In this document: piece after piece, positions 15,101 to 40,991 of the stretch
Layout: each line of letters begins with the position of its first letter
Numbering within the stretch: position 1 is the first letter of the stretch
Virus record (IMG/VR): IMGVR_UViG_3300029286_000009
Span: 186,001-250,000 of that record
Length of the DNA stretch: 64,000 bases
Reading direction: 5' to 3' (one strand)
The notes under the pieces: generated by a model
What the model was told of the DNA's origin: nothing
What the model saw: only the letters and a program-made list of their open reading frames with translations
Database searches by the model: none
Program-made: the position numbers and the translations under genes

Positions 15101-15249
15101 GTTCATATTCTCCTTCATAAATATGTTTTTGAACCTTGTCCCATAGTAACGTAATCTGGTTTTCAATGTCTACAGTATAAAACATGTTTTTATCCCCCTA
15201 ACTCTTATTACCAGTTTGGTTGTCTTGAAGTGCTGCTTTAAGAGTTACT

Positions 15250-16534
15250 GTCAAATACCGCCAGCTAAAGCAGGCGGCTTGTAAGTCGTACTTACGATAG
15301 GCTGTTTGACATCAGCCCGACTTCCAGCGGACATGCCCTTGGAAGCAAGGTAGTTTAGGCGAATATTTTTACTAGCGTTGAGGTCTGCATTGTGTTGAAA
15401 ACCACAAGACTTACATACAAACCAAGACTGGCTCTGCCGGTTCCTTCTCGCTATGTATCCGCAACGGGAACACTTCTGGCTTGTGTATCGAGGATCAACA
15501 TATTCAATCGCAATGCTCCTCATCCTGCCTTTGTAATCCAAGAAAGAACGAAGTCTCTCAAAAGACCAAGAGTGGATTCTTCGCCGTTGTTTTCTTTTCG
15601 CCTTTACTCTGCCTCGAATATCAACAAGATCCTCAAGGACAACGACAGAACCGGGGACAACTGTATCAACTATTCGCCTGGAAATTACGTGGTCACAATC
15701 CTTTCGGAAGCGGTTTTCCTTCTGCGAAAGCTTTTTAAGGTGTCTTTTCGCAGAATCAGTGCCTTTCGATTGGAGAGAGCGTTTGATTCTAAAGTATTTC
15801 TTGGTGGTTTCTTTCCATTGTCGTTCACCAATAAAGTCGGCATTACTGGTGACTGCGGGACGGTTAACTCCGAGGTCAATTCCTACGGTGATGTTCGTGG
15901 GCTCAACAACTGCATCGTCTGTAGAGACAACAACGTGCAAAAAGACTCTTCCGTCTCGCTTGAAGCAGAGGTCAGAGGAGCAGACTTTCCAGGAAAGATA
16001 TCTGCGGTAGTAGTCACAGACTATCAACGTAATGGGGATTCTTCCCTCGACAGAAGAAAGAAAAGCGGTTCCCTTATCAAGTCTAATCGTGGCGGATCTA
16101 GCATCATATCTAACTGTGAGGGCTTTCCCTGTAGGGCAAGAAGCCTTTTTACCTTTTTTCAACTTTGCTTTAGCAGATTTCAGAGCTTCTGTTGCTTTCA
16201 TTCTAGCGGAACACACGAGTTGACTCGGAAGGGACGTGGTTTCTCTTTCAAAACGATAGGTAGCATGGTGCAAATCAACTCCGTTGACCCTTGGGGCTTC
16301 CCATCCTGTTTGACAGACCCTAGCAAAAGACTGCGAAAATTGTTCTGCGGTCTCTTTGAGAGCTTGCAATTTGTCACTTTTAACAGGAAGTTTGAGAGTT
16401 ACGGTTTGCACGTTTGCTCCTTCATATACAAGGTAAAGCATCCGCAACTAAAAGTCAAGGCACAAATACTAAGAAAGGAGGAGCCGGCTTCCTCTGCCGC
16501 CTAAAGACGGCAGTCTCCGCCGGGACAAATCTTT
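15250..16534 (-). mobile_element. IS200/IS605-family TnpB-only (non-autonomous) element
   Basis: Terminal hairpins; plus-strand ends GTCAA at 15250 and ATGA at 16535; interrupts a reconstructable small ORF. Confidence 0.85.
15251..16447 (-). CDS. tnpB: TnpB RNA-guided nuclease
   Basis: RuvC motifs GIDLG, VLEDL and NADLNAS; zinc finger CSRC/CKSC; YTSQKCS. Confidence 0.92.
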   Translation of the reverse strand: MRMLYLVYEGANVQTVTLKLPVKSDKLQALKETAEQFSQSFARVCQTGWEAPRVNGVDLHHATYRFERETTSLPSQLVCSARMKATEALKSAKAKLKKGKKASCPTGKALTVRYDARSATIRLDKGTAFLSSVEGRIPITLIVCDYYRRYLSWKVCSSDLCFKRDGRVFLHVVVSTDDAVVEPTNITVGIDLGVNRPAVTSNADFIGERQWKETTKKYFRIKRSLQSKGTDSAKRHLKKLSQKENRFRKDCDHVISRRIVDTVVPGSVVVLEDLVDIRGRVKAKRKQRRRIHSWSFERLRSFLDYKGRMRSIAIEYVDPRYTSQKCSRCGYIARRNRQSQSWFVCKSCGFQHNADLNASKNIRLNYLASKGMSAGSRADVKQPIVSTTYKPPALAGGI

Positions 16535-17244
16535 ATGAACTCCCAACAATCGCTTGCAAGGTCAGCATCATAATAGCGATGCTTACTGGGTATTCTGATA
16601 ACGAAACCGTCTACCATTTGTTTAATTACTTTTAATTTTAGTTGAGAACTTTCTTCGGCATCCATGCTATTACTCCTGTTGTAAGTCTACCCAACCTGAG
16701 GTGGTCTTTTCATAAATATGCGTCCAATAGTGGGCAACGTTTAGTGCATATGTTATTGCATCCTCAAGTGTTTCAAAATACACGGAAAAGTCACCTTCTC
16801 CATCTGGGTAGCTATAACTCATAGCATAGATGTTCTTTATTTGTTCTATGTCTATATAATCCCCTTTCCCACACCTCGATTGTTTATACCTGCACAGTGT
16901 TTTGAGCAAGACAGGTTCTATTTTATTAAGCTCTTTAGGCATCAGGAACCCCTTTTAATGCTTCCGGATCAGAATATATCTCTACATGACCGCAGGCAAT
17001 ACAGAATCGTACATTGAAATTTATCGGTTCTTGTCTATCCTCCTGATTAATATACAAAGACATGAAATTCCAGTCGACATTGTTTGTAACAACCAATTCA
17101 TATAGTGGTGAGTATACAAGCCTGCACATCGGGCAGTGCTTAGTTGTTCGCTTTTTACATACCTTAGGTGGCTTCCATAACCCTAAAGTAGGCGACCCCT
17201 CAACTGTAACATAATTTGTAGATTCTATTTTCGTTTCTTCCATA

Positions 17245-17502
17245 TTATCTCTTATCATACTCATTATATTCCATGCAAGCAACACCCAATGCAGTTGCTT
17301 TTTTGATATTGCTCATCACTTCTTCATAATTCCAATCCTTGCCTACCAAACCATCTTGGGCTCTCCGTAGATAAACCTGCATATAGGAAATCCAAGAACC
17401 CAGTTCATGGTATTGGTCATGCTCGACCCCGCCCCAAATATTGTCTTGGTGGTCTCTTTCTGCATCAATTTGCATATATACTTGTGTTCTTGATAGTGCC
17501 AT
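17245..17502 (-). CDS. Possible MazG-like all-alpha NTP-pyrophosphatase-fold protein
   Basis: ER..Q...WG...H....W pattern and ALGVACME C-terminus. Confidence 0.35.
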   Translation of the reverse strand: MALSRTQVYMQIDAERDHQDNIWGGVEHDQYHELGSWISYMQVYLRRAQDGLVGKDWNYEEVMSNIKKATALGVACMEYNEYDKR

Positions 17503-17513
17503 GGTTACCTCAT

Positions 17514-17860
17514 CAAATATTCCTCACGGATACCCCGCACTTTAGTGCTGGGGAGGAAGTGAGACCCTGGAAACTAACAAAGTGCTAGCCCTTTCCAGTA
17601 GCCTGAGATTTCTAGCGTGGATTGACTTGTGGAGGCTTTGTCCACTACCATCCCTTATATCAAAATTTCCTGTTGATCTTCTGCCAAAAAATAAATGCTT
17701 TCTTGCCTTCCCAAGCGACTTTGTCAAATCGCCTGAATCCTAATATCTCTCTAGGGGCAGTATTACGAATATGGCTTCTGGCACCCTTGTATAACTTTCT
17801 ATTACACTTTCTAACTTGCTTGATTGTAAGTGGTGTAGTTCGCTCTTGGTTTTCTCCACC
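17514..17860 (-). pseudogene. iscB: 3' remnant of a second IscB element (frameshifted) including its element end
   Basis: Translates to ...TIKQVRKCNRKLYKGARSHIRNTAPREILGFRRFDKV..AFIF / GRRSTGNFDIRDG...SLPPQH, matching the C-terminus of 39227..40435; one extra base in the A6 run at 17686-17691; same end hairpin and ATGA flank. Confidence 0.9.
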
Positions 17861-18034
17861 ATGCTTCTACTATTATTATTTCTGGGTGCTGTTTATGTTT
17901 GTCTCTACAATCTCTACAGAAAAATGTATCTTCTGGGGGTTCTATGTCCAGGTTACTCCCATACGGAGTGCCCGAGTCTGCGATCTTACAGTAGCGTCCG
18001 CATATACTGCATCTGGTTGAATATCTAAACATAC

Positions 18035-18469
18035 CTAGCATCCCTTTAAGTCCGGGCATAAACGTGATAGCTCAGTTCTTATTTCTTCCCTTTTTCTCAA
18101 TTTATCTTCCACATTCATATTTGGTGTAGCTATCCAGAAAGATATTTGTCTGTCCTCTCTTTTGATGGAGTAGGCATCGGAAAGACTTTTTGCAAATCCC
18201 TCTACCAGATTGAGCAACGACGATGCCTCTTCATTGTTTGAAACAACTGTAGAACATTTCAAAGGTTCTACTACCGGAATCTCGTTAACTTCCCAAATGA
18301 TTTCGCCATTTTGCTTATAGCTAACAGTTATGTTGTTTTCTCTTAAATAATCTCTTATAGTATCCGATGCTTCCCAATCCTTCCCTGCTCTAGCTAACTT
18401 TATTAGCCTAATCCATGCTTCCACACTTTTTCTATTTATTAGTTTTTGTTGCATGTTACCAACTTTCAT
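18035..18469 (-). CDS. Protein with a CysRS C-terminal (anticodon-binding)-like domain
   Basis: ARAGKDWEASDTIRDYLRENNITV....GEIIW matches the AR..KDW..AD.IRD.L...GI.V.D...G..W signature. Confidence 0.6.
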   Translation of the reverse strand: MKVGNMQQKLINRKSVEAWIRLIKLARAGKDWEASDTIRDYLRENNITVSYKQNGEIIWEVNEIPVVEPLKCSTVVSNNEEASSLLNLVEGFAKSLSDAYSIKREDRQISFWIATPNMNVEDKLRKREEIRTELSRLCPDLKGC

Positions 18470-19687
18470 AGTCTGTTATATTTATCTCTTCCCCGCACCC
18501 GCACTTCACAGTAATGGCACTACCCAGAGACGTGGGGAAAAAAGAGAATATTAGACCCCCGCCGATGGCTCCAGTATAACCTGTAAAGCGGCATCCTGTT
18601 TTCTTGTGCTCTTCATACCACTTCTCATAGGTTTCATACTCTTTGTCTGACATTACAAAAGTCTTATCTGTATATTTTCCACCCATACACTCCTCCTTAA
18701 TTTGTTGCAACTCGTTGTGTTTTCTACTAATAACTTTTGCTAATTTTTTGACCATCTGTTTCAGGGCAAATATACGTTCTCGTTGCCTACTAAGCTCGTG
18801 TGCTTGTGCCTTGCATCGCAGGTCTAACATAATGAAAGCAGTTTGTGTCACTTCTTTTCTTCAATACCAAAAAACTTTAAAGCGAGTCTGACAGCGTCAT
18901 TGCTGTCACCATCCGGCTGTTTATCCTTGTTATATAGCCACATTGTTTTCCCTTCTTTGTCTATCAGTTTTTTGTGTCCGAGTAGGTATTTGAGTAGACT
19001 TTCTGCACAACTAGGACATAGGTCTTTTGTTTCATAATCAAAATAAATCTCTACTGTATGCCCACCTGATTCTCGGGTAATTCCATTAGGTATACTTAAT
19101 CTAATGGGTGTAGAAATTTCTTTACCACATTTATCGCAGTCTATTACTTTTCGTTCTGCCATTCGTTTCTCCCAGGGCGGTCACTAATTTTAATAGATAT
19201 TTCTGGTTCTATCTTAACATTTCCATCCCACACCCTTTCTGCCCCCAAGATTGGGTAGTCATCCAAGGTTCCATCCTCTTCTTCTCGGGTAATCATGACA
19301 ACCCACTCAGGGTCAAACTTTTTGAGTAATTTTTGTAATTCTTTGTTAATCATCAGTAGTGTCCTTCTACAAAAAATTTATGAATGGTTGCCCTAAGGTT
19401 ATTTCGTGATATTGTCTGTAATGCGTTTACTTGCCATTTAGTCGGGTCTTGTTTATTTTTGCTTTGCGTGCGAACATTTATTTCTGTAAAACCGTTAAGG
19501 TAGTCGTTAACAATTACGATTCCATATTTGTGGTGTCTAAATATATATTGGGTATACTGAGTAGAAGAATATTGCAAATTTTGCTGTCGCTTTGATTGTA
19601 AACTAAACCCATGGTCTCGCATAATCGCCTCTACTGTGTCTGAACTAAACCATGCTGTTAACAACGGTATAAGGCAAAGCAATAAGA

Positions 19688-19951
19688 TTATGTGTGCAAA
19701 TCTAAACATAATTCTCCGCGGACTAACTTTTCTTTTTGCTTCCTACTTAATTTTTTAATTTTGTGCTCCAGTCTACACGCCACCGATCTATTAGGACAAT
19801 CTATAGCCCATATCGCATACACAGGCAATCTCCTTGTGGTATACTTAGCTCCTTTTCCAGCATTATGCACTGCTACTCTTCTGTCTATATTAGTAGTTGT
19901 TCCGCAATACAGGGTATCGTCAGAGCACTGTAGCAGATAAACTTTCCACAT
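19688..19951 (-). CDS. GIY-YIG nuclease (UPF0213-like)
   Basis: VYLLQCSDDTLYCGTT.NIDRR...HN.GKGAKYT. Confidence 0.85.
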   Translation of the reverse strand: MWKVYLLQCSDDTLYCGTTTNIDRRVAVHNAGKGAKYTTRRLPVYAIWAIDCPNRSVACRLEHKIKKLSRKQKEKLVRGELCLDLHT

Positions 19952-20306
19952 CTAATCCACCCGCAGATTGGCACATAGGGCACACGGCGTAATTACCCGG
20001 CGGGTCACCAGGACCGCGAGTATAAAATATTATCTCCAATTCACTGTCTTTACCTGACCAACCACATTTGCAGATATATTTATAATTGGGGTATTCTATG
20101 ATCTGAATTTTCATTTTTCTGTGCCTCTACTATAATTATAGTACCCAACTTCGTCTTCGGGTAAAGTTTCTCCGTGCATAAAAGTCAATCTAGTAATAAA
20201 CTCTTGTAATTCCCATTGATTTTTTTCTAGATGATTTACGTATTCTTTGAGAGCAAACATAACTACTTGATATTCTTCGTCTGTAATGTATAATAATTTT
20301 GACATC

Positions 20307-20927
20307 TTAGTCTCCTACTAACCTCCTAATAACTGTAGATGCAGTAGCTGATTTCTTTATAGAATAGAAAAGGTCAGATACCCTGGTGGCAGATATAGCA
20401 TCTAGTTTCAAATAAGGCACAGGGTTGTGTGTTTTTCCTTTTACCATCAATTCTAAATGTAAATGAGCACCGTTAGATTTTCCAGTATTTCCTACCTCAC
20501 CTATAATTTGCCTAGCAGTTACCTGTTGCCCTTTATTTACTTTAACTAATCCAAGATGTGCATAGTAGGTGAACGTTTCTGGTTGGTGTTTTAGCAGTAT
20601 GGCATTCCCATATCCACTTAAATTCCGATGTCTTCCCGCGTACACTACACTACCTGACATACAAGCTCTTACTGGTGTGCCTTTTGGGGCTGCTATATCT
20701 ATACCTTGGTGGAAGTGTCCATGCCTATTACCAAAGGGAGAACAGATTTCGCCCCCTGCTACGGGAAAAAATAATGCTATACTCGGCGAGATTTGGCGGG
20801 GCAAAATAGGAATACCACTTCGCCCGCCAATTTTTTTGTTCTCTGTAGGAACTATTTTAGTCCTCACTGATGTATGTGCACATGAGACTAAAAGTAGTAG
20901 AGAAAATATGCAGATTAAATATCGCAC
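20307..20927 (-). CDS. M23 family peptidase, probable lipoprotein
   Basis: HQGID, YAHL and GAHLHLE motifs; lipobox LLVSC. Confidence 0.9.
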   Translation of the reverse strand: MRYLICIFSLLLLVSCAHTSVRTKIVPTENKKIGGRSGIPILPRQISPSIALFFPVAGGEICSPFGNRHGHFHQGIDIAAPKGTPVRACMSGSVVYAGRHRNLSGYGNAILLKHQPETFTYYAHLGLVKVNKGQQVTARQIIGEVGNTGKSNGAHLHLELMVKGKTHNPVPYLKLDAISATRVSDLFYSIKKSATASTVIRRLVGD

Positions 20928-21094
20928 TGGCTTCTGTTATGATGTGTCTACTTCCTTTACTAAAAATTTTGCATCTCCTATTTCAAAACCGTCAATATCA
21001 AACATCACATTGTTGTATAAACAATCTTCTAGTTGTGTTAGGTCAAAATCGTCTGCTACTTCTCCGATAATCCGAATGTATATTTCTGCTTTTT

Positions 21095-21376
21095 TCATGT
21101 AACACCAGTAGCTTTCCTGATATAGTTCAGTGCTAACTCCAATAAAGCATTGTAAGCTATTTTGGTTTGATTCCCTAACAATTCGCTACCAAAATAGCTG
21201 TCTAATTTACCTAACACATAGTTCTTCTTTTCCAACCCGGTGTAGGCTGACCCATCTTCATGTTTTAGTGTTTCCGCTTCAGTTACTACGGTAATTACTT
21301 GTGTAATCACTTCCTTGCCTACTCCTAAAGCCCACCGGACTAGAATCCATACTAAACTCCATAAAATTGCTTGCAT
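21095..21376 (-). CDS. Holin-like small membrane protein
   Basis: N-terminal hydrophobic helix then TG.EKK..V motif as in LL-H-type holins; near the M23 peptidase. Confidence 0.4.
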   Translation of the reverse strand: MQAILWSLVWILVRWALGVGKEVITQVITVVTEAETLKHEDGSAYTGLEKKNYVLGKLDSYFGSELLGNQTKIAYNALLELALNYIRKATGVT

Positions 21377-21378
21377 TT

Positions 21379-22029
21379 TCAGTTTCCTACTACTGTATAG
21401 TCTGTAAATGAGTCACCATAAAAGTTAGTGGTATTCATAGCACATAATTTTGCTAGGCGAGCAGTACCACTGCAAGTCATGGCGAATGCATACTTAGTTT
21501 TACTGACATCATACTTAGCCGTGTTGCCCGCATTTAGTCCCAATGACTGCCCTTGCCCCCAAGCGTCAGCGACTGCCCCAATATAAGTAAATGTCCAGTT
21601 ACCTAATTCAGTCTTATCCGCTATCAGCTTTTTCACCTGGTCATAAGAGAACTCCCTTGAAGCATTCTCCTGCCCATCCGTGATAATTAACATTAACATC
21701 TTTTCATTATACGGAACTGTTCCTAGCGTATTAATAGTTCGTCCCACCGCATCTAACAATGCAGTCCTTCCCCTAGGTATGTAGGTTATTCTATCTAGAT
21801 TACCAACCTCGTGGAGGGGTTTTTTGACGTAGTTAATCTCATACTGGTCATCAAACTGAGTAAGGCTAATAAAATACTCAGTTTCTTTGTCTTTCTTTAG
21901 TCCTTCTAGGTAAGAGTTAAAACCCCCTATAGTATCATCCCAACATGAGCACATAGACCCGGATCGGTCTAGAATTACACTAACATGCACTTTGTTCTTT
22001 CTTGAAAATGGACAAATAAATTCACTCAT
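21379..22029 (-). CDS. von Willebrand factor A domain protein
   Basis: MIDAS motif DRSGSM, T.LLDA, IITDGQEN. Confidence 0.9.
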   Translation of the reverse strand: MSEFICPFSRKNKVHVSVILDRSGSMCSCWDDTIGGFNSYLEGLKKDKETEYFISLTQFDDQYEINYVKKPLHEVGNLDRITYIPRGRTALLDAVGRTINTLGTVPYNEKMLMLIITDGQENASREFSYDQVKKLIADKTELGNWTFTYIGAVADAWGQGQSLGLNAGNTAKYDVSKTKYAFAMTCSGTARLAKLCAMNTTNFYGDSFTDYTVVGN

Positions 22030-22249
22030 TTATTACCTCGTAGTTTAACGTGTTCCTCATGGGTAACAAAATTACCCGCTTTGTCTCTATACCTAAATCC
22101 CATTCCTTCGCATATTTTACATAGCATTACTCCTTCTTCGCACTCGTATAAGTCCCGTGGATAATTACACTGGACACACTTCTTCGGATCATCGGGCCAG
22201 TCACATTTGAATGTACCTTGACCCATACATTGGGGGCAGGAGCATGGCA

Positions 22250-22600
22250 TTATCCTCTATGCCCCCGTCGCCACTCCTTCACACCCCGAGACATACGGTG
22301 TTTATGTTCTCCAGGGTGATTACGTTTCCATTGTAAGTAACTTTGCATTTCGTCTTTTTGTAGTAGCTCGTCTAAAGTCATTTCGGATAGGGCTTTGTTG
22401 GAAAAGAGCATGTGAACTTGTCCTCCGCAGTCAGCACAACAAGGAACAGTTTCCAAACCTCGCCCTCCCCTACTCTTGGGTTTTAGATGATGCCGTTGCG
22501 TGGCGGGGACGGTTTTACATAATTTACACAGATTGTTTACAAGTGTATTGAATTCTTCGTTTAATGGCTTCCCCATAATACCGTTCCCCATGTATGGCAA
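22250..22600 (-). CDS. Small HNH endonuclease
   Basis: CKLC...HHLKPKSRGG...CADC...VH. Confidence 0.75.
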   Translation of the reverse strand: MPYMGNGIMGKPLNEEFNTLVNNLCKLCKTVPATQRHHLKPKSRGGRGLETVPCCADCGGQVHMLFSNKALSEMTLDELLQKDEMQSYLQWKRNHPGEHKHRMSRGVKEWRRGHRG

Positions 22601-25850: not shown

Positions 25851-25890
25851 TTATAGCTCTGGAAAAGTAATAACTCTATAGAGGTCTGAT

Positions 25891-29098: not shown

Positions 29099-29103
29099 AC
29101 GAC

Positions 29104-29621
29104 GGGGCACACAGGTATCGACAGACGTTATGAGTAGATTTGTATTGGTGGTCGGTGTGAGTGGTACCGTAAATCATTCGAATTATAAATGCCGAAGATA
29201 ATTCTTTCGACATGCTCTCAGCTTTTTGTGAAGCCGACCGTAAGGTTAGTGTAGCATACGCTGGTTAATAGGGCGGAGTTCCCAGTAACTTATCAACAGA
29301 AAACTGGGTGGCGGAGGCAAGTGGGTTTTATACCTGCTTCCTCTCCTGGTTACGAGGCTAAACTGACCTGGTGGAGGCACGCGGGAAACCGCGTCCCCTA
29401 AATCCTATGCAAGTAGGTATCCTAGTGTCAGGCATTAGGATAGAGATGGGTAGGGTAATCGCCACCGTGCGGGAAACCAAACCTTCTAGCCCGCAAAAGT
29501 CAGCGGCGGGGTCTCGAAAAGGCTGGCAAACTCTCTGTCGGGAGTATAAATATGGACTACACCATCTAAATTTACATTTCGAAAGGCGGACTGGATCTGG
29601 GTTCGACTCCCAGGTGCTCCA
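29104..29621 (+). ncRNA. ssrA: tmRNA
   Basis: Acceptor stem GGGGCAC/GTGCTCC-A with G3-U70; T-arm CTGGGTTCGACTCCCAG; 5' GGTATCGAC; resume context ATAAAT-GCC at 29191; tag ORF to 29268. Confidence 0.92.
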
Positions 29622-29898
29622 TAAAATTGTCTTATAACAAAGCATTGCTCCCGAAGACATACAAGATTTGTATAATAAACATTGTAATTGGGTCGATGTC
29701 AAAGGTTTTAGGCATCTCCGATCGCCAACTGCGACGTATCCGAAAGATGCATATTAGCTGATCTGCCATGTGTAGAAACAGTAAAGTTAACGTCAACAGT
29801 GCTAGGCGGGGCGTTGATGGTTGATACTAGTCTAGCGGGGGAATAGTTAACGTGACTGTTCCCCCATTTCATATGTAAAGAAGGTAAGGAGAGGTTAA

Positions 29899-31125: not shown

Positions 31126-31136
31126 GGGAAGGTATA

Positions 31137-31766: not shown

Positions 31767-31847
31767 ACAATCTAGAGGTACAAGACACACAATTGAACCG
31801 GCTAGAAACAAACCTACACATGTAACTATCTTCTCGGACTGGAAAAA

Positions 31848-32918: not shown

Positions 32919-33796
32919 TGTATTTTTCTGATTTTATAAGCAACCCTACCAGGGCTAAGTCTTATTTTCTTTCAGGTAAAGATGATTTCCTGAAAGAATA
33001 TCTGGTGGGATACATTTCTAAGATGCACAATAAGTCAGTTATTCGTTTGGATAAAAAGCAGCCCCCGAAGTATATGGGTAGTTCATTCTTATTCAGGGAG
33101 GAACCTTTGTGGGTAGTTGATCCAGCAACCACTTTCATTCCCGAGGGGCTTGCTATAAAGTTAGGTAATAAAATAACTAAGCCTTATACTAGTGCTGGAT
33201 ATGTAGAGATTGTTTGTAGTTTGACTTTCGATAATCAAATTGAGGACTTTGTAAAGCAATTGGCTTTAGTGGCGGGGCTAAATACTAGTTCAGAGTTCAT
33301 CAAATATATATGTTATCTAAACCAATATGACCCATGTTCTTGCTGTAATACAGTTAACTTGATAAGTTTGCATAAGAACATTTCTTTCGAAGAGATACCA
33401 CTAATTAGTGGTAGTATTGTGAACCCAGATATAACTACTACTGTTAATCATTTTGTAGATGGGAAGTATAGTTACGTCTTAACTGACATTATACAGGCTA
33501 AGGTTGACTCTAGATTGCTTTGTTTCATTCTAGCAGATACGATTGCACGTGCCATGGATACAGTTGGGGTGGTGAAACCTACGTGGATGCAAAGGCGTTT
33601 ACTGCAGCTCTGGTCTAAGTTAGAACCACTAAATGTAGGTATTATTCTGTCTACTCTAAATTCAATCCATAGAGATATCTTGTCTCCCACAGCAGTCATA
33701 CGATCGCGTCTAGTTTATTTAGTGGCGTATATTGGGGGATGGTCAAATATTAACATAGGAGATGTCAATAGAAATAATGGATATTACGAAGAATGA
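32909..33796 (+). CDS. Probable clamp loader delta-like subunit
   Basis: Overlaps dnaX; N-terminal YFLSGKDDFLK resembles HolA. Confidence 0.45.
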   Translation: MCIMYFSDFISNPTRAKSYFLSGKDDFLKEYLVGYISKMHNKSVIRLDKKQPPKYMGSSFLFREEPLWVVDPATTFIPEGLAIKLGNKITKPYTSAGYVEIVCSLTFDNQIEDFVKQLALVAGLNTSSEFIKYICYLNQYDPCSCCNTVNLISLHKNISFEEIPLISGSIVNPDITTTVNHFVDGKYSYVLTDIIQAKVDSRLLCFILADTIARAMDTVGVVKPTWMQRRLLQLWSKLEPLNVGIILSTLNSIHRDILSPTAVIRSRLVYLVAYIGGWSNINIGDVNRNNGYYEE

Positions 33797-34603
33797 TAGG
33801 GCTTTCTATACTGCCGCTATAGACTTTGTGACTGAAAACCTTGAGATAGTAAACAATTTTGTTGCTCTAAATGGGTTGTCGGGGTCGTTGGGCCAGGATT
33901 TGTCTGACGTGGTCATAATAGGCATCAAGAAGTGGCTAACGAGTCCAGAAGGTGAGGGTTGGTTGGGTACCTTAGGATATAAACGTTCTGGTAAACCTGA
34001 AAAGACTTATTTAGATCGGGTATGTCCAGTTTGTAGCGGAATACATATGCGGTATGCTAATGTAAGATGTGAGCGGTGTGGGCGCTATATGTGCCATCCT
34101 TGTACGTCTGTAGTTGATTCTAGATATCATATCATATGGTGTGACCATTGTATCGCAGACGTGGCGTTAATAAACTTTCCTAGTAGCATTAGAGAATACT
34201 AGTTTTTTTATTTAGGAGGCTTATAATGGCAAGAGAGTGGGAGGAGACCCCAGAAGCTGACAATCTGGATTATGATGACAACCCCTACATTTCTCCGGGT
34301 GATAATGCTTCTCGTCGGTATTGGGCACGTGAAGCATGGTTATACCGCCCAGAAGACTTAGAGGAGCATGACAGTCGCCGTGGGACTGACCGGAGGTATA
34401 TGCGTGGTATGAACAAATATTTGCGAGACGAACTTCGTTTGCGAAATAATACTGAGGGGTTGGTTTGATGAAGAAAACAGGTAAATTTTTTCAGAAAATG
34501 TTAGGGGATATACATAACGAAACTTGTATGTGTCGGCGTTGTCGTGCTAGGGTAGATGCTATGGAAAGGCGTCCCATACGCTTAGACTCAATACGGAACT
34601 GGG

Positions 34604-35353
34604 ATGATGTTAGGGAAATTACCGAAGTTACAGAAGAATATAACGAATAGTCAAAATTTACGAGAGGCTGGACGTGTCCTACGGGACGCGTTCAACCTCA
34701 TCTTAACGTATGTCCAGCCGGGGGTCTCCTTGCAGGATATAGACTTTCGTGTAGAGAAATTCTTACGTCAAAACCACGCCTTGTCCACGCCCCGTCTCCT
34801 CAATTTTCCTTACCAGTTTTCGGCATCCATTAATTATGAAGTAGTAAATGGATACCCAGATGATAGGTGTGTGGTAGCAGGCGATATAATATCAATAGAT
34901 ATGGGCATTTTTTGTAGGGGTGTGTTTGTGGATAAAGCGGTGTCTGTTGCATTTCCTCCAGTTAGTGGTAAAGTAGCTTACTTACTTAAAGCCGCACAAG
35001 ACTGCTTAGATGTAGGAATACGGTCTTCTGCAGCGGGAGCTAATAATAAGATTATAGGGAAGATGATAGAAATGACAGCGAATTATTACGGAATGTCTAC
35101 ATCTCCTCGCTTCTCTGGGCATGCTATAGGTGAGGAGCCACATATGTATCCTTTAATACCCAATGTGGCTAACGCTGCGGTTGAGGAGGTTATACTGAGA
35201 GAAGGGCAGAGTATTACGATTGAACCCATAGTATTCTATGGCAGTTCTCATTCTATCGATTCTTCAAAACATCTTATTATTTCTGACTCAATAAGTGCTC
35301 ACTTTGAAGAGACTATAATTATTCATAGTAACCATGTTGAGGTTGTGACATGA
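34604..35353 (+). CDS. map: Methionine aminopeptidase (M24)
   Basis: GDIISIDMG, D, GHAIG..H, TIEP, SAHFEET. Confidence 0.88.
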   Translation: MMLGKLPKLQKNITNSQNLREAGRVLRDAFNLILTYVQPGVSLQDIDFRVEKFLRQNHALSTPRLLNFPYQFSASINYEVVNGYPDDRCVVAGDIISIDMGIFCRGVFVDKAVSVAFPPVSGKVAYLLKAAQDCLDVGIRSSAAGANNKIIGKMIEMTANYYGMSTSPRFSGHAIGEEPHMYPLIPNVANAAVEEVILREGQSITIEPIVFYGSSHSIDSSKHLIISDSISAHFEETIIIHSNHVEVVT

Positions 35354-35682
35354 AAGAACTTCTATTTGTTATATGTGCTTATTCACTGGCAAGTATACTA
35401 GTTGAACAAGGTATTTTTAAAGAGCCCCGCGAATGGCTAAAATCTTGTGTGGCAGACAATTCTAACTGGTTGCTACGCAAGTTTTGTGCTTTAATCCGTT
35501 GTATGTGGTGTGCGGGGGTATGGTGCGGATTTATACTATGTTGGATGGGGTTTAATATAGTAGATATAAATCACTGGGATTTTTTCTTTTGTGGGCTGAT
35601 AAGCGGTTTTACTACGTATTTAATTCATCAATTTATGTTGCGTTTAGATATATATTTGAAAGAATTTGGGATTGAGTCTTAA
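35350..35682 (+). CDS. DUF1360-like membrane protein
   Basis: IF...R and LI.C.WC.GVW within hydrophobic helices. Confidence 0.6.
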   Translation: MKELLFVICAYSLASILVEQGIFKEPREWLKSCVADNSNWLLRKFCALIRCMWCAGVWCGFILCWMGFNIVDINHWDFFFCGLISGFTTYLIHQFMLRLDIYLKEFGIES

Positions 35683-35700
35683 TTGGCTCTCTGACAGGGA

Positions 35701-36165
35701 ATGTTAATCGTGACCTATTGGGACGATGAGGATAATAGAAAGGTATTAAGGGAAGAAAAACTGCGTGAAAAGCGGGGGCTCCTTGTTAAATCTGCTCCTC
35801 CACCAGTTGAGTCAGCTATAGATAAAGAACATTTAGATAAGGTTCTTGCTATCTTAGAGCAACAAATGCAATTGACTGCCGCACAAACACAGCAGCTGAA
35901 CGAATTGCATCAAGCATTAGATAACCAAGGGCAGGTTTTATCTAAGCTTTTAGAAAAAGAACCTGTTGTTATAACAGAAGGTGGCATTACAAAAACTGTA
36001 AAGAGGGCTTCCGAAGAATTGCCTATTCTTGGTGATATTGATGTAAATGTTGTGGATACTTCAGGTATCGAGACACAGGGGGAGGCAGGAGAGCAAAAAA
36101 CAGAGGGCAATAGCGTAAAAGACCGTGTAGCTAGACTACGGGAATTAAAGAACAAGGGGAAATAA
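35701..36165 (+). CDS. Coiled-coil hypothetical protein
   Basis: Q/L/E-rich heptads; directly upstream of the actin-like gene. Confidence 0.55.
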   Translation: MLIVTYWDDEDNRKVLREEKLREKRGLLVKSAPPPVESAIDKEHLDKVLAILEQQMQLTAAQTQQLNELHQALDNQGQVLSKLLEKEPVVITEGGITKTVKRASEELPILGDIDVNVVDTSGIETQGEAGEQKTEGNSVKDRVARLRELKNKGK

Positions 36166-36167
36166 AG

Positions 36168-37223
36168 ATGGAGCAAAATCAGGAATTACTTAAAGAAATA
36201 CCGGTATCTATTTCTTATCTTTCAGGAATCGGAGTCGATATTGGAACTAGCTTTCTTCAAGTAGCGAGAGAGAGAACAGATGGCAAGGTTGAGTTTGTGT
36301 CTGAAAGGGACGCTTTCTATGCGATTAAACCCACGTCGGCGGTATCCGCAAAATTTATTGAAAAATCTCTTGTTCAGAAGGGGGCTTTTGTCTTAAAATC
36401 TGATGGCATCTTTTATGTAGTGGGTAGAGAGGCGATTGCTACAGCGATAGAAAGGGGTGGCTCGGTGGAGAGACCACTAAAGAAGGGTGTCCTTAGTATG
36501 AAGGATAAAGATGCAATGGGAATGCTTGCGGTTTTGCTTAAGTCGCTTGTCAAAGAAGCTCAAACCCCAGGAGAAATATGTGTTTATTCCTATCCGGCTG
36601 ACCCGTTAGACCAGTCGTTTGATGTAGTATATCATCAACATAGGATGGGAGAAATTCTAGGTAAAATGGGGTATAAAGCTGTACCACTGTTGGAATCAGA
36701 AGCTTTAGCGTACAGTGAGCTTATGGATGAAGATTTAACCGGAATTGCGGTTTCATGCGGTGCTGGTATGTTTAATTTTGCGTGTTTTTCAGTTGGACAG
36801 TGTCTTCTTAGCTTCAGTATAGCCCAAGGTGGTGATTACATTGATAAATCTGTAGCTAAACCTCTAGACATTTCGGAGACCGAAGTGCAGGCGGAAAAGG
36901 AAAGTCCAACTATGGATTTGAATAATCCTAAAGGACAGATACAAGAAACTATAGTGATGTATTATGACAATTTAATCAAATATGTTTGTGATGTCTTAGA
37001 AAAGAAGATTGGGCAGTTCGATGAAATGCCTAAATTCACTAAGCCTATAACTATAGTTATATCTGGAGGCACTAGTCTTCCTAAGGGCTTTATGGAAAAG
37101 ATGTCTGTTGCACTTTTATCTAAAAATTTTCCATTTACGATTGGCAACATAAAACGTGCAGGAGATCCGCTCACGGCAGTTGCGAATGGTTGTTTAATAT
37201 TTTCTCAAATGATGAGAGAATAA
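36168..37223 (+). CDS. Actin-like (MreB/FtsA/ASKHA) ATPase
   Basis: GVDIGTS, E.EA.A, CGAG, GGDYID, ISGGTS, P..AVA.G. Confidence 0.85.
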   Translation: MEQNQELLKEIPVSISYLSGIGVDIGTSFLQVARERTDGKVEFVSERDAFYAIKPTSAVSAKFIEKSLVQKGAFVLKSDGIFYVVGREAIATAIERGGSVERPLKKGVLSMKDKDAMGMLAVLLKSLVKEAQTPGEICVYSYPADPLDQSFDVVYHQHRMGEILGKMGYKAVPLLESEALAYSELMDEDLTGIAVSCGAGMFNFACFSVGQCLLSFSIAQGGDYIDKSVAKPLDISETEVQAEKESPTMDLNNPKGQIQETIVMYYDNLIKYVCDVLEKKIGQFDEMPKFTKPITIVISGGTSLPKGFMEKMSVALLSKNFPFTIGNIKRAGDPLTAVANGCLIFSQMMRE

Positions 37224-37240
37224 TCTTTAAGTAAAAAGGA

Positions 37241-38437
37241 ATGGAAAAAATGGGAAAGGAAATAGTAACAAAGGAATTTAATTTTATGGAAGACACTATT
37301 GTGGCGGTTGACCAAAACGATGTGTGGTATATTTCTCCACGACATATTTGTGAAAATGTAGGATTAGATTGGGCTTCTCAGAGTAGAAAAATTGAGAAGG
37401 AGTCTGAGAAGTTCAACCGTTGTCTTATGACAACAGTTGGTCACGATGGTAAACTGCGTGAAATGGTTATGATACCTGTGACACGTATAAATACATGGAT
37501 ATTGAGTATCAATGCAAAGCGTGTCAAAAACTTAAGAGTAAGAGCATATCTACGGAAATACCAAGATCAGCTATCCGATTGGTTGTATGAAGCGGGATTT
37601 CTAGGAGCGGCGGTAAATAAGGATGTGTTGTTACTCCCTGCGGAACGACAGGTGGAAGTATTGGGAGATGCTCTTCACAGAGCTCGCTTGCAAAGTGAAC
37701 CATTGAATGAGTATCAAGAGAAGATAGCGACCATTTTAGGTTTACCTGACTTAGAAGGGATGGATAAATATAAGACTCAGCGTCTGCAGATGTTGACAGA
37801 TGTTAAATTAGGTGTTGCTAGTCCTTTGTTCTCAAAAGGTTTGCGGGGAGTAGTAAGACTAACTGATGAACTATTTTACATCGCTTATATGATAGAAAGG
37901 TGGTGTGTTGATAAGCTGATTTGCTGTTTTCCACAAGACTTGCCCACGCCTGTGGCGATAGAGCAATATATAAGAGATAAAGGTTATTGTGAACCTTGGG
38001 TGGTTAAACCCATTAGGCACGCAGATGCACGAAGGGTGGTTAAGCTTAATACTCTGTTTAGCTATAGTATTTCTGATTTAATAATACGATTTAATAAACC
38101 AGCTGAATTGATACACAATGCTATGTTTAGAGTAGTAAAAGATATGGAGGATGTATTTACTGCGACTGAAGTTAAACTGGAACTTCCAGCCATAAGAGAC
38201 AGAGCCAGTATGTCAGCTAGGCGGGAGCAGTATATGAAAACGGCTGAGTGGTGGGATAAGCGAAACGCTTTTTTCAAAGTTTTCAATTGTTGTGTAGTTT
38301 GTGGGGATATGGAGGTTGCATCTTCGCGATTTGAGGCACACCACTTGCACTATGATACATTAGGATTTGAGTCACCTTGGGATTTAGTGCCCTTGTGTAA
38401 AGATTGTCATACTAAGGTAGAAGGAAGGAGTAGGTGA
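37241..38437 (+). CDS. P22 antirepressor N-terminal domain plus C-terminal HNH protein
   Basis: ICENVGLDWASQ..K, DGKLREM, WILSIN..RVK; CVVC...HHLHY...LCKDCH. Confidence 0.82.
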   Translation: MEKMGKEIVTKEFNFMEDTIVAVDQNDVWYISPRHICENVGLDWASQSRKIEKESEKFNRCLMTTVGHDGKLREMVMIPVTRINTWILSINAKRVKNLRVRAYLRKYQDQLSDWLYEAGFLGAAVNKDVLLLPAERQVEVLGDALHRARLQSEPLNEYQEKIATILGLPDLEGMDKYKTQRLQMLTDVKLGVASPLFSKGLRGVVRLTDELFYIAYMIERWCVDKLICCFPQDLPTPVAIEQYIRDKGYCEPWVVKPIRHADARRVVKLNTLFSYSISDLIIRFNKPAELIHNAMFRVVKDMEDVFTATEVKLELPAIRDRASMSARREQYMKTAEWWDKRNAFFKVFNCCVVCGDMEVASSRFEAHHLHYDTLGFESPWDLVPLCKDCHTKVEGRSR

Positions 38438-38992
38438 TATGGCAAAAATAGAAGAACCAATTACAATTATGGGATTTGCATGGATAGATGATGATGGTGT
38501 TGTAAATTGGGCAACTAGAGAGGATATGGATGGGGTTAAACCGAAAGATCGCCCTAAGGATTGCATTTCATGTGTCATCGAAATTACTCCAACTAACGAA
38601 TGGGTAGATCGTGCCAAAAATGAATATGATTTCTTGGGGGATATTGCAGGAAGAATCAATCAATTTAATTCTGATTTAGAAGCTTTACAGAAATCAATAA
38701 AAATAGGGAGGGAATGATATGGCCAATTTTATACCAATTGAGCATCTTAACGAGGATTACGACGCGGATAGATATGCGATGACCCCATCTCGCCGCCGTA
38801 AAATTCACAAACACCGCAAGGAGATGGACCTGTACGGACCGAAATTACCTTATGATTTCGGGATATTTCGGCATAAATTCGGTCACCGATTTTATGAGTT
38901 TGAAGCTGTTTGTCCTAAGTGCGGGTATATAATGTACGTTACCAAACTGACTTGTGCAGTAATATGTAAGTGTGGAGAATTGGTTAAAGTAG

Positions 38993-39226
38993 GTCAACCA
39001 CCCCACGCCTAAAGGCGGGGGCTTGAAAGAGCCTTGGTTGACTAGGGGGCATTAATTTGCAGCAGTTGAGAACCAGAAATACATACACACCCCAAAATAT
39101 TCCGCACGTTTCGGGCGACTGTGGTTGGACATTAAAAGTCCTGGTGGGTAGGGACGGTGTGTCCAGCTTAAAAACGGTTTCCAACAATCCCGATGCGGTC
39201 CCAACCTCAGAAAAGAGGAGCGAAAC
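38993..39226 (+). ncRNA. omega-RNA (HEARO-like) scaffold
   Basis: About 230-nt structured leader of iscB with GTCAACC/GGTTGAC closing stem. Confidence 0.8.
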
Positions 39227-40435
39227 TTGAGAGTATTTGTTAAAAATCAAAAAGGTAATCCATTAATGCCGACTACTCCAAGAGGAGCAAGAGTGCTTCT
39301 CTGTGCAGGGAAAGCGGTAGTGGTTAAACGAACACCGTTCACTATCCAACTCACAGCAGCAACTGGCGAGACAAAACAGCCTGTCGTCTTAGGTGTAGAC
39401 AGCGGCTTCACTCACGTCGGTTTATCTGCGGTATCAGACAGGGCTGAATTGTATGCGGCAGAAGTCTTATTACGCACCGACATGGTTAAGCTCAATGCCG
39501 AACGAGCAATGTATCGACGTAACAGGCGAAGTCGCAAGACATGGTACCGTCAACCGAGGTTCCTTAATAGGTCGAAACCGAAGGGTTGGTTGGCACCTAG
39601 TATTCAGCACAAACTAGACTCACATAAGAAGTTGATCGACAAGGTAAAAGGACTGCTGCCAATCACCAAGGTTGTTATTGAGGTTGCCGCATTTGATATT
39701 CAGAAGATTAAAAATCCTGAGATATTCGGCGAAGGCTACCAGAATGGTGAGCAGTCCGGTTTTTGGAATGTCAGGGAGTATGTATTTCACAGGGACAGCC
39801 ACAAGTGCCAAGCTCCAAAGTGTAATCATAAAGACAAAATACTTAACGTCCATCATGTTGTTAGCCGGCAGACAGGCGGTGATAGACCCCATAATCTAAT
39901 TACACTTTGTGAAACCTGTCACAAGAGTCACCATAAAAAAGCACTAGACCTTAAGATCAATGCGGGAAACGGATTCAAAGCAGAAACGTTCATGTCAATG
40001 GTAAGGTGGAGATTAACTCAGGACACAGGCTCACAACACACATTTGGTTATATCACAAAAACAAATCGCATTGCTGCACGTTTAGAGAAGTCTCATATCA
40101 ACGATGCTTTCATTATTGCAGGTGGTGGACAGAATCGGACCACAGCATTAACGATCAAACAAGTAAGAAAGTGCAATCGCAAACTATACAAAGGCAGCCG
40201 AAGCCACATCAGGAATACTGCCCCACGTGAAATATTAGGTTATCGACGCTTCGATAAGGTGAAGTGGGGTCGTGTTGAAGCCTTTATTTTCGGAAGACGA
40301 TCCACTGGCAATTTCGATATCAGGGACGGCAACGGGAAAAGTCTCCACAAATCTATTAACGCAAAACACATTAGGTTGCTGGAAAGAGCTTCAACAAGCT
40401 TGATTTCCAGAACCTCACTTCCTCCCCAGTGCTAA
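39227..40435 (+). CDS. iscB: IscB RNA-guided nuclease
   Basis: PLMP, RuvC-I GVDSG, RRNRRSRK bridge helix, IEVAAFD, HNH (VHH...N...CETCH), SHINDA. Confidence 0.95.
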   Translation: MRVFVKNQKGNPLMPTTPRGARVLLCAGKAVVVKRTPFTIQLTAATGETKQPVVLGVDSGFTHVGLSAVSDRAELYAAEVLLRTDMVKLNAERAMYRRNRRSRKTWYRQPRFLNRSKPKGWLAPSIQHKLDSHKKLIDKVKGLLPITKVVIEVAAFDIQKIKNPEIFGEGYQNGEQSGFWNVREYVFHRDSHKCQAPKCNHKDKILNVHHVVSRQTGGDRPHNLITLCETCHKSHHKKALDLKINAGNGFKAETFMSMVRWRLTQDTGSQHTFGYITKTNRIAARLEKSHINDAFIIAGGGQNRTTALTIKQVRKCNRKLYKGSRSHIRNTAPREILGYRRFDKVKWGRVEAFIFGRRSTGNFDIRDGNGKSLHKSINAKHIRLLERASTSLISRTSLPPQC

Positions 40436-40463
40436 AGCACGGGGTATCCGTGAGGAATATTCG

Positions 40464-40991
40464 ATGAGTCTTGATTATATAGAATCTTTATTTGATATTC
40501 TGGATGGCAAGGTAAACTTTTCCAATGTTGGGAAGAAGAAACGCGGGCGTAAAGCAGGTTATAAGCATTCTCAAGAAACTATAGAGAAGATAGCAGACCA
40601 GATGCGTAATCGCACTAAAACTGAGGAGGAGAAGAAAAAAATATCACAATCTTTACAAGGCATCCCCAAATCTAAAAGTACACGTAGAAAAATTTCTAGG
40701 TCTAAAAAGGGGGATAATCCTGTTAAAATTTCTGATGATTTACTCTCAGCATACAATGGAGCAAAAAGGGAAAAAGATGTTTCTACATCGACTGCAGAAT
40801 GGTTAGAAAGGTGTGGACACAATAGAGTTGAGTTGTGCGAGTGGATTAAGGCTCACTCCGATGAATTTAATGAATTTGGATTTGATGAATTTGAGAATGA
40901 GGCTGGGGATATATATACTGAGAAACTTCTAAATGAAGGGTTTTATAAAGAGTCCCCTATTGACCAAGATGCACACAATGAGGATAAGTAA
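40464..40991 (+). CDS. NUMOD3-repeat DNA-binding protein
   Basis: GYKHSQETIEKI, KTEEEKKKIS and KSTRRKIS repeats. Confidence 0.65.
   Translation: MSLDYIESLFDILDGKVNFSNVGKKKRGRKAGYKHSQETIEKIADQMRNRTKTEEEKKKISQSLQGIPKSKSTRRKISRSKKGDNPVKISDDLLSAYNGAKREKDVSTSTAEWLERCGHNRVELCEWIKAHSDEFNEFGFDEFENEAGDIYTEKLLNEGFYKESPIDQDAHNEDK

What the first reader, a model, noticed from the sequence alone, without database searches (positions are those of the whole stretch)
15198..40470. TnpB and IscB elements share end architecture and the same ATGA target
Seen: the TnpB element reads GTCAAATACCGCCAGCTAAAGCAGGCGGCTTG ... CTTCCTCTGCCGCCTAAAGACGGCAGTCTCCG...|ATGA. The IscB element reads GTCAACCACCCCACGCCTAAAGGCGGGGGCTTG ... 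CTTCCTCCCCAGTGCTAAAGCACGGGGTATCCG...|ATGA. The IscB remnant also ends at ATGA. The nucleases lie in opposite orientations relative to the same ends. Both empty sites can be rebuilt (a 60-aa ORF; and ...VKVDES* overlapping the ATG of 40464). Established: the TAM of these nucleases matches the transposon target motif and the flank supplies the guide. Inference: one TnpA acting in trans mobilises both (none is in the window); predicted TAMs are 3'-ATGA for IscB and 5'-TCAT for TnpB.
Basis: partly seen in the sequence, partly recalled or inferred. Interest (0 to 1): 0.6.

Follow-up and report, generated by a model that had tools for sequence, protein, structure and literature searches.

The report
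TnpB and IscB transposons in phage
A freshwater jumbo phage carries one TnpB and one IscB guide-RNA nuclease transposon plus a decayed IscB copy; all have the same kind of ends and the same TTCAT (read as ATGA on the other strand) insertion motif, and none has its own transposase, which is an arrangement already described for the IS200/IS605 family.

Summary
All four quoted end sequences are exact. The TnpB element is 15250-16534 and the IscB element is 38993-40463. A frameshifted, 5'-truncated IscB remnant lies at 17514-17865. Each abuts ATGA on the side with the CTTCCTC hairpin. TnpB and IscB face opposite ways relative to these ends.

- Rfam HEARO starts exactly at 38993.
- 27 of 29 parsed viral IscB left ends are followed by ATGA (chance about 14%).
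- All 10 TnpB relatives from viral contigs, plus a bacterial one, have TCAT just before the left end.
- Right-end bases covary with the bases beside the hairpin in the parallel order expected for the TnpA DNA-guide rule.
- Two related phages have the IscB site empty, with the conserved downstream gene starting at ATGAGT.

The 260-kb phage has no Y1 TnpA. Autonomous elements with the same end architecture exist in a 252-kb phage contig and in a Chthonomonadales MAG. That MAG also holds an IscB element with a matching right-end terminus.

One TnpA mobilising similar-ended TnpB and IscB elements, and an IscB TAM of TTCAT, were shown experimentally in Geobacillus (Meers 2023). These are new members of a known kind. 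"One TnpA for both" remains inferred.

The parts
15250..16534 (-). Non-autonomous IS200/IS605-type element carrying TnpB1 (1285 bp). The transposon top strand is the window minus strand.
   Evidence: End strings are exact. Relatives conserve TCAT|left end and right end...TTGAC|.
15251..16447 (-). TnpB1 ORF (398 aa from TTG). The likely true start is GTG at 16411, because relatives align from residue ~13. Its stop codon lies inside the terminal GTCA.
   Evidence: PF07282 and PF01385. The RuvC D/E/D and zinc-ribbon region aligns to solved TnpB/Cas12f chains.
15250..15310 (-). Right-end module and 3' end of the TnpB guide RNA (omegaRNA). A GTCAAA...TTTGAC closing stem encloses the subterminal hairpin (15258-15277, loop CTAAAG on plus), preceded by ACAAGC and ending in TTGAC.
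   Evidence: Consensus fold of 11 family members: 13 of 20 pairs show compensatory changes.
15230..15249 (-). Predicted TnpB1 guide (flank 3' of the right end: AGTAACTCTTAAAGCAGCAC).
   Evidence: Position relative to the right end. The guide rule is from Karvelis 2021 and Meers 2023.
16484..16534 (-). TnpB1 left end. Outer stem CCGGC/GCCGG encloses TTCCTC, a hairpin with loop CTAAAG, and TCTCC, followed by an 11-nt tail.
   Evidence: The same layout is seen in relatives.
16535..16539 (-). Target/TAM for TnpB1: TTCAT on the minus strand (ATGAA on plus).
17514..17865 (-). IscB element remnant: the 3' part of iscB (frameshifted, 5'-truncated) plus an intact left end. ATGA lies at 17513-17510 (minus strand).
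   Evidence: 72% to the window IscB element and 78.7% to the element in L006.
38993..40463 (+). Non-autonomous IscB element (1471 bp). The transposon top strand is the window minus strand.
   Evidence: The same site is empty in related phages.
38993..39205 (+). HEARO RNA (IscB guide-RNA scaffold). Its first 5 nt, GTCAA, are the reverse complement of the right-end terminal motif TTGAC. The right-end hairpin is at 39001-39021.
   Evidence: RF02033, 111.2 bits, model positions 1-211.
38973..38992 (+). Predicted IscB guide (TGGAGAATTGGTTAAAGTAG). It lies in the 3' end of the co-oriented upstream gene 38719-39012.
   Evidence: The upstream gene orientation fits the read-through requirement described by Meers.
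39227..40435 (+). IscB (402 aa, TTG start).
   Evidence: RRXRR 7.8e-62 and HNH. Aligns to OgeuIscB-type structures, with the RuvC D and the HNH HH conserved.
40413..40463 (+). IscB left end. Outer stem CCTCAC/GTGAGG encloses TTCCTC, a hairpin with loop CTAAAG, and TATCC, followed by the tail AATATTCG.
40464..40468 (+). Target/TAM for IscB: ATGAG. It is also the start codon of the conserved 175-aa gene.

Best explanation
**What they are.** The TnpB element (15250-16534), the IscB element (38993-40463) and the IscB remnant (17514-17865) are non-autonomous IS200/IS605-family (IS605-type) insertion sequences of one end type.
- On the transposon top strand each reads: TTCAT or CTCAT target, then a left end with an outer stem enclosing GGA(G/T)A, a hairpin with loop CTTTAG and AGGAAG, then cargo, then a right end with (A)CAAGC, a hairpin with loop CTTTAG and 2-3 nt ending in TTGAC.
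- They entered single-stranded phage DNA 3' of the target motif through a Y1 (HUH) TnpA supplied in trans by the host, a co-resident element or a co-infecting phage. The phage itself encodes none.

**Why the orientations differ.** Both nucleases take their guide from the flank outside the right end.
- The TnpB guide RNA ends at the right end and reads outward, so TnpB is sense on the top strand. Its target is 5'-TTCAT followed by the flank.
- The IscB guide RNA (HEARO) begins outside the right end and reads inward, so IscB is antisense to the top strand. Its target is the flank followed by 3'-ATGA(A/G).

**What the nucleases do.** After excision, or in a co-infecting phage that lacks the element, target motif and flank are joined. 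The nuclease cuts that empty site, and recombination with an occupied copy restores or spreads the element.

**Shown versus inferred.**
- Shown here: the anatomy, the boundaries, the motif conservation, the absence of TnpA, and the empty IscB site in related phages.
- Inferred: activity of the nucleases, supply of TnpA in trans, and a single TnpA serving both elements.
For: - Identity of the parts: Pfam and Rfam; catalytic motifs aligned to solved IscB and TnpB/Cas12f structures.
- Right-end boundary: HEARO position 1 coincides with GTCAA-type termini in 22 of 22 loci, and the flanks are unrelated.
- DNA-guide covariation in 49 distinct right ends: terminus nt 3 versus the 4th nt after the hairpin is C:G 43, A:T 6, with no exception. 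Terminus nt 1 versus the 1st nt after the hairpin is G:C 39, T:A 6, with 4 exceptions. The pairing is in parallel order, so it is not an RNA helix.
- The same rule fits the left end. G..A beside the hairpin goes with TTCAT. In L041, the variant AAAA goes with TTTAT.
- Left-end motif: 27 of 29 distinct parsed IscB left ends are followed by ATGA, 20 of them ATGAA, against 14% by chance.
- TnpB1 family: 11 of 11 members have TCAT before the left end, and all end in TTGAC, CTGAC or TTGAT.
- Shared guide-adjacent stem in both RNA types.
- Empty IscB site: the two flanking genes are adjacent in L185/L186 and in G006, a relative with a terminase 61-62% identical. The downstream gene starts ATGAGT, as in the window.
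- No PF01797 match in the 96%-complete phage record.
- TnpA-bearing elements with the same ends: L157 in a Chthonomonadales MAG and L193 in a 252-kb phage contig. The same MAG has an IscB whose right end ends in the same 13 nt.
- Literature: one GstTnpA excises TnpB- and IscB-bearing ISGst elements with similar ends, and the GstIscB TAM is TTCAT.
Against: - No TnpA source is identified for this phage, and its host is unknown.
- No excision joint or empty allele of either site was found. Contigs from four other lake or freshwater runs show the TnpB1 site occupied. Exact empty-junction 24-mers are absent from the metagenome contigs.
- The TnpB1 insertion site has no homologues elsewhere, so its rebuilt 60-aa ORF is unverified.
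- Hairpin stems and irregularities differ between the elements. On the top strand, TnpB1 has a T.G pair (left end) or a T.T mismatch (right end), while IscB has a bulged T.
- TnpAs found with this end architecture are only 28-37% identical to each other. The architecture is therefore broad and does not by itself identify one enzyme.
- The IscB site reads CTCAT, not TTCAT.
- No sigma-70-like promoter was detected for TnpB1.
Confidence: 0.78

Rival explanations
1. The end similarity is generic to a broad class of IS605-type elements. The TnpB and IscB elements were delivered by different TnpA enzymes at different times.
For: - TnpAs associated with this end architecture are only 28-37% identical to each other, no closer than to the TnpA of the TnpB2 end type.
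- Hairpin stems and irregularities differ between the two elements.
- The remnant is closer to the L006 element than to the resident IscB element, which implies at least two IscB invasions.
Against: - Both elements share the target motif, the terminal motif, the bases beside the hairpins that read those motifs, the loop sequence and the outer-stem layout.
- A contrasting end type, the TnpB2 family, exists in the same phage, so the match is not universal.
- GstTnpA handles several ISGst families with diverged ends.
Confidence: 0.2
2. The elements did not transpose into this phage. They arrived by recombination or RNA-guided homing from related phages that already carried them at the same sites, so no TnpA was needed in this lineage.
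For: - The phage has no TnpA.
- Related elements are common in viral contigs: 176 IscB relatives were confirmed, and only 8 of 49 such records hold a TnpA.
- Homing into co-infecting phages is an accepted possibility (review).
Against: - Homing only copies an element to the same site. The original insertions, precisely 3' of TCAT and without duplication, still need TnpA chemistry somewhere.
- Relatives examined have the IscB site empty, and G006 carries its IscB elements at other sites.
Confidence: 0.3
3. The hairpins are ordinary transcription terminators or phage regulatory repeats, and the ATGA is a coincidence of start codons.
For: ATGA at 40464 is a start codon. Some of the hairpins are picked up by the terminator scan.
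Against: - The hairpins occur only at element ends in 260 kb.
- One is part of a full-length HEARO match.
- The architecture, the motif and the covariation recur at unrelated insertion sites in dozens of contigs.
Confidence: 0.02

Closest known systems
ISGst elements of Geobacillus stearothermophilus (ISGst5 with IscB, ISGst2 with TnpB; Meers et al. 2023, bioRxiv 10.1101/2023.03.14.532601)
   Same: - TnpB-bearing and IscB-bearing elements share similar left and right ends.
- Most copies lack tnpA and are mobilised in trans by one TnpA.
- The IscB guide RNA spans the right end, with its guide outside the element.
- The IscB TAM is TTCAT.
- TAM and terminal motif differ at positions 3 and 5, matched by DNA-guide bases.
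   Different: - Here the terminal motif is TTGAC, not TTCAC.
- The carrier is a 260-kb freshwater phage with no tnpA at all.
- The TnpB element uses TTCAT, not TTTAT.
- Nothing was tested experimentally.
- Sequence relatedness of these proteins to the Gst proteins was not measured.
ISDra2 / IS608 (prototype IS200/IS605 elements; Karvelis 2021, PMC8612924; IS608 structural work from my own knowledge)
   Same: - Subterminal imperfect palindromes.
- Insertion 3' of a 4-5-nt target without duplication.
- The target and the right-end terminal motif are read by the bases beside the hairpin.
- The TnpB TAM equals the target, and the guide comes from the right-end flank.
   Different: - The motifs differ: TTGAT for ISDra2 and TTAC for IS608.
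- Those elements are autonomous.
- The left end here has an extra outer stem enclosing the hairpin.
HEARO RNA (RF02033) with IscB, e.g. OgeuIscB (PDB 7xht, 7utn)
   Same: Full-length HEARO match directly upstream of an RRXRR-RuvC-HNH protein, with a best structure E-value of 6e-39.
   Different: This IscB is 402 aa against ~495 aa for OgeuIscB. The published OgeuIscB TAM differs (from my own knowledge, not checked here).
Autonomous relatives found here: L193 (phage contig IMGVR_UViG_3300021254_000021) and L157 (Chthonomonadales MAG)
   Same: Same left-end and right-end architecture. TTCAT is the target, and TTGAC or CTGAC the terminus.
   Different: They carry a Y1 TnpA. Their TnpB proteins are 29% and 44% identical to TnpB1.

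Membership tests
IS200/IS605 family, IS605-type TnpB element | TnpB with a RuvC-like D-E-D fold and a zinc ribbon | tested here: met
   PF07282 1.9e-22 and PF01385 3.6e-11. The GIDLG, LED and NADLNA motifs align to solved TnpB/Cas12f chains.
IS200/IS605 family, IS605-type TnpB element | Subterminal imperfect palindromes at both ends, no terminal inverted repeats, and insertion 3' of a short target without duplication | tested here: met
   Hairpins at 15258-15277 and about 16494-16514. TTCAT is present once. The rebuilt junction shows no duplication. The layout is conserved in 11 relatives.
IS200/IS605 family, IS605-type TnpB element | Y1 (HUH) TnpA transposase in the element | tested here: not met
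   No PF01797 match in the whole 259.7-kb record. The element is therefore non-autonomous, as are about 75% of tnpB loci according to Meers.
IS200/IS605 family, IS605-type TnpB element | Guide RNA (omegaRNA) overlapping the 3' end of tnpB and ending at the right end | tested here: met
   Conserved 3' module with compensatory pairs across 11 members. No Rfam family matched it.
IscB / HEARO OMEGA element | IscB protein with an RRXRR/PLMP N-terminus and a split RuvC with an HNH insert | tested here: met
   PF14239 7.8e-62 and PF01844. Aligned to IscB structures.
IscB / HEARO OMEGA element | HEARO RNA immediately upstream on the same strand, starting at the transposon right-end boundary | tested here: met
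   RF02033, 111.2 bits against a threshold of 83, model positions 1-211, at 38993-39205. The boundary behaves the same way in 22 loci.
IscB / HEARO OMEGA element | The TAM on the 3' side of the target equals the transposon target motif | tested here: inconclusive
   ATGA follows 27 of 29 left ends, and the site is empty with ATGAGT in relatives. Nuclease TAM preference itself was not measured.
Elements mobilised by one shared TnpA (ISGst-like network) | Same target motif, same terminal motif and same DNA-guide bases in both elements | tested here: met
   TCAT and TTGAC in both. GA(G/T)A is 5' of the left-end hairpin and CAAG is 5' of the right-end hairpin in both.
Elements mobilised by one shared TnpA (ISGst-like network) | Hairpins recognised by the same enzyme | not testable with these tools
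   The loop CTTTAG is shared, but stems and irregularities differ. This needs excision assays.
Elements mobilised by one shared TnpA (ISGst-like network) | A cognate TnpA present in the same cell | tested here: inconclusive
   Absent from the phage and the host is unknown. Cognate-type TnpAs exist elsewhere (L157, L193).

The most novel reading that the evidence does not exclude
In gene-dense phage genomes, IscB elements are retained almost only at start codons. The ATG of the ATGA(A) target opens an ORF of at least 60 codons at 18 of 30 independent insertion sites, against 22% for other same-strand ATGA sites. This places the guide in the tail of a transcribed upstream gene. It may let TnpA-less elements persist purely as RNA-guided homing or marker-exclusion devices between co-infecting phages, with TnpA needed only rarely, for example from TnpA-bearing phages such as the L193 record.
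Probability: 0.3. Interest if true: 0.5.

Novelty: new member of a known kind. Interest (0 to 1): 0.3.

Why it matters
- It gives well-delimited natural examples of two compact RNA-guided nucleases, a TnpB of about 386-398 aa and an IscB of 402 aa. Each has a predicted guide RNA and TAM that could be tested directly.
- It shows that the ISGst-type logic holds in an uncultivated freshwater jumbo phage that has no transposase. That logic is one end type, cargo of either nuclease, and opposite cargo orientation dictated by where the guide sits.
- It adds little conceptually beyond Meers et al. 2023.
- The start-codon bias of phage IscB insertions and the existence of TnpA-bearing copies in other large phages are the only mildly new leads.

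Tried and rejected
- **GenBank phages.** DNA searches of both regions found no relatives.
- **Reads.** Contigs of four lake or freshwater runs laid on 14300-18300 showed only the occupied form, with no joints. Depth was low and these were contigs, so this is no evidence against excision.
- **Empty junctions.** Exact 24-mers for both rebuilt empty junctions gave 0 hits in the metagenome contigs.
- **TnpB1 flanks.** Homologues of the TnpB1-flanking genes were not found in the protein collection or in the related phage G006. That empty site is therefore unverified.
- **Host.** The closest bacterial TnpB1 relatives are at most 53% identical and taxonomically scattered, so they give no host clue.
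- **TnpB2.** I first considered the second TnpB (60727-61848) part of the same network, because its right-end hairpin matches the IscB right-end hairpin over 21 nt. Its family has a different end type: the left end is GAAAGCC, hairpin, GGATGAA, and the right end terminates in GTCAC. I excluded it.
- **Ribosome-binding site.** I considered that the left-end tail supplies a ribosome-binding site to the downstream gene (GAGG lies 9-12 nt before the ATG at 40464). Most other loci lack such a motif, so this is not general.
- **Remnant site.** The remnant's flanks show no homology to the flanks of its closest relative, L006.
- **Promoters.** The promoter scan gave nothing above shuffles.
- **Automated left-end parsing.** It worked for only about 30 of 80 loci. 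By eye, roughly 60 of 80 show a hairpin followed by ATGA.

Full report
**Setting.** The window is bases 186001-250000 of a 259,732-bp IMG/VR virus record judged 96% complete. The same DNA occurs in seven lake or freshwater metagenome runs from four studies. A 545-kb viral record, G006, is a relative, with a terminase 61-62% identical.

**Checking the observation.**
- The four quoted end strings occur once each, exactly, at 15250, 16488, 38993 and 40418.
- The ORF at 15251-16447 (minus strand) is a TnpB (PF07282, PF01385). The ORF at 39227-40435 (plus strand) is an IscB (RRXRR, HNH).
- Rfam places a full-length HEARO RNA at 38993-39205, so model position 1 falls on the first base of GTCAACC.
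- ATGA follows both right-hand ends, at 16535 and 40464.
- A BLAST of the IscB element against the whole genome finds a 334-nt remnant at about 17509-17842 on the minus strand. It ends ...GAGGAATATTTG|ATGA.
- The remnant is frameshifted and 5'-truncated. It is closer to the element in L006 (78.7%) than to the resident IscB element (71.9%), so it records a separate invasion.
- In the whole genome, G+C-rich hairpins with a CTAAAG/CTTTAG loop occur only at element ends.
- Deleting 15250-16534 restores a 60-aa ORF. Deleting 38993-40463 gives ...ELVKVDES* overlapping the ATG at 40464.

**Boundaries and motifs from relatives: the IscB family.** A scan of viral contigs confirmed 176 IscB relatives and kept the best 80.
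- In 22 of 22 loci tested with Rfam, HEARO position 1 coincides with a GTCAA-like pentamer, and the sequence upstream is unrelated between loci.
- I compared 49 distinct right ends. The third base of that pentamer and the fourth base after the right-end hairpin are complementary in all 49 (C:G 43, A:T 6). The first base and the first base after the hairpin are complementary in 45 of 49.
- This pairing is in parallel order. It cannot be an RNA helix, and it matches the way IS200/IS605 TnpA reads its cleavage sites through bases beside the hairpin (IS608 work from my own knowledge; Meers).
- The same rule fits the left ends. G..A beside the hairpin goes with TTCAT. In L041, the one clear variant, AAAA goes with TTTAT.
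- Downstream of iscB, the layout is an outer stem enclosing TTCCT(C), the hairpin and T.(T/C)CC. In 27 of 29 distinct parsed loci this is followed by 2-12 nt and then ATGA, and 20 of those read ATGAA. Chance expectation is 14%.

**Boundaries and motifs from relatives: the TnpB1 family.**
- All ten viral relatives, at 34-57% identity (two of them identical copies of one locus), and a bacterial relative have TCAT (mostly TTCAT) just 5' of a left end with the layout GGA(G/T/A)A, hairpin, AGGAA inside an outer stem.
- Their right ends read ACAAGC, hairpin, 2-3 nt, then TTGAC.
- The 3' 60-nt module folds with a GTCAAx...xTTGAC closing stem that shows compensatory changes.
- The IscB right end has the same closing stem on the other strand. 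One palindromic right-end module therefore supplies the guide-adjacent stem of both RNA types.

**The empty IscB site.**
- The 97-aa upstream gene has homologues at 56-59% identity.
- In L185 and L186, that homologue is directly followed by a 170-aa homologue (55%) of the window's gene at 40464. The junction reads ...GAAGAATAATGAGTG.
- G006 shows the same adjacency...GACGAATAATGAGTG.
- The 1471 bp are therefore an insertion placed exactly 5' of the conserved ATGAGT.
- No such test was possible for the TnpB1 site, whose flanking genes have no homologues.

**Transposase.**
- The phage has no Y1 TnpA.
- Among 49 viral records that carry related elements, 8 have a Y1 TnpA somewhere.
- L193, from a 252-kb phage contig, is an autonomous element spanning 83-1929. 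It has a GTCAAC right end with a CTAAAG-loop hairpin and CTTG, a TnpB 29% identical to TnpB1, a divergent TnpA, and a left end with TTCCTC, hairpin, GTTTCC and an outer stem, followed by ATGAA.
- L157, from a Chthonomonadales MAG, has TTCAT, the left end, tnpA, tnpB (44% identical) and a right end terminating in CTGAC.
- The same MAG holds an IscB element whose right end terminates in the same 13 nt.
- L041 is an IscB-TnpA element.
- These TnpAs are only 28-37% identical to each other, so the end architecture is broad.

**Mechanism.** The anatomy fits the published model. TnpA excises and inserts the top strand 3' of the target. The guide is the flank outside the right end. After loss, target plus flank is cut by the nuclease and repaired from an occupied copy.
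- The opposite orientation of the two nucleases follows from the guide sitting 3' in the TnpB RNA and 5' in the IscB RNA.
- Both intact elements and the remnant are co-oriented with their neighbouring phage genes. IscB needs this, because its guide must be transcribed from outside the element.
- The catalytic motifs of both proteins are intact.
- Neither guide has a second target in the phage genome.

**Comparison with what is known.**
- Meers et al. 2023 showed that one GstTnpA excises several ISGst families with similar ends, carrying either TnpB or IscB. They also showed that most such loci lack tnpA, and that GstIscB uses TTCAT.
- A 2026 review already lists homing into co-infecting phages as a mode for these elements.
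- The finding is therefore a correct reading of new members of a known kind. The differences are the TTGAC terminus, the phage carrier without tnpA, and TTCAT for the TnpB element.

**Limits.**
- No excision products or near-identical empty alleles were seen.
- The host and the TnpA source are unknown.
- "One TnpA for both" rests on shared motifs and analogy.
- Hairpin irregularities differ between the two elements.

Noticed in passing
window 60727-61865 (+): A second TnpB (373 aa, 27% identical to TnpB1). Its right-end hairpin matches the IscB right-end hairpin over 21 nt, but its family has a different end type: the left end is GAAAGCC, hairpin, GGATGAA, and the right end terminates in GTCAC at 61865. 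Some relatives carry tnpA (L140-L142). Its left boundary in the window was not fixed.
   Followed up: partly
window 29104-29624 (+): A phage-encoded tmRNA-like gene (Rfam RF00023, 61.9 bits; ARAGORN). It is unusually long at 521 nt, and the predicted tag peptide is atypical.
   Followed up: no
IscB loci L005-L084 (left-end/TAM junctions): The ATG of the ATGA target opens an ORF of at least 60 codons at 18 of 30 distinct insertion sites, against 22% for other same-strand ATGA sites. Phage IscB elements therefore sit preferentially right at the start codons of co-oriented genes.
   Followed up: partly
window 40464-40991 (+): The gene just downstream of the IscB element carries a NUMOD3 motif, a DNA-binding motif of homing endonucleases. 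It is conserved next to the terminase module in related phages, so it is not part of the element.
   Followed up: partly
window 38719-39012 (+): The upstream gene now reads into the element and stops at the TAA inside the right-end hairpin loop CTAAAG. Six residues are element-derived, in place of the rebuilt DES tail. The iscB stop codon likewise lies in the left-end hairpin loop.
   Followed up: yes
L065:1485-2175: A ROOL RNA (303.8 bits) and a tRNA lie immediately upstream of an IscB element in another viral contig.
   Followed up: no
L007:~3650-3740; L034:2261-2475 and 5037-5256: In L007 the inner left-end module (GGAGA, hairpin, AGGAA) is flipped relative to iscB within its outer stem. 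L034 has two HEARO copies 2.8 kb apart.
   Followed up: no
G006 (IMGVR_UViG_3300037484_000435, 545 kb): This record is related to the window's phage, with a terminase 61-62% identical and a syntenic packaging module. It carries two IscB elements at other sites, while the window's IscB site is empty in it.
   Followed up: partly
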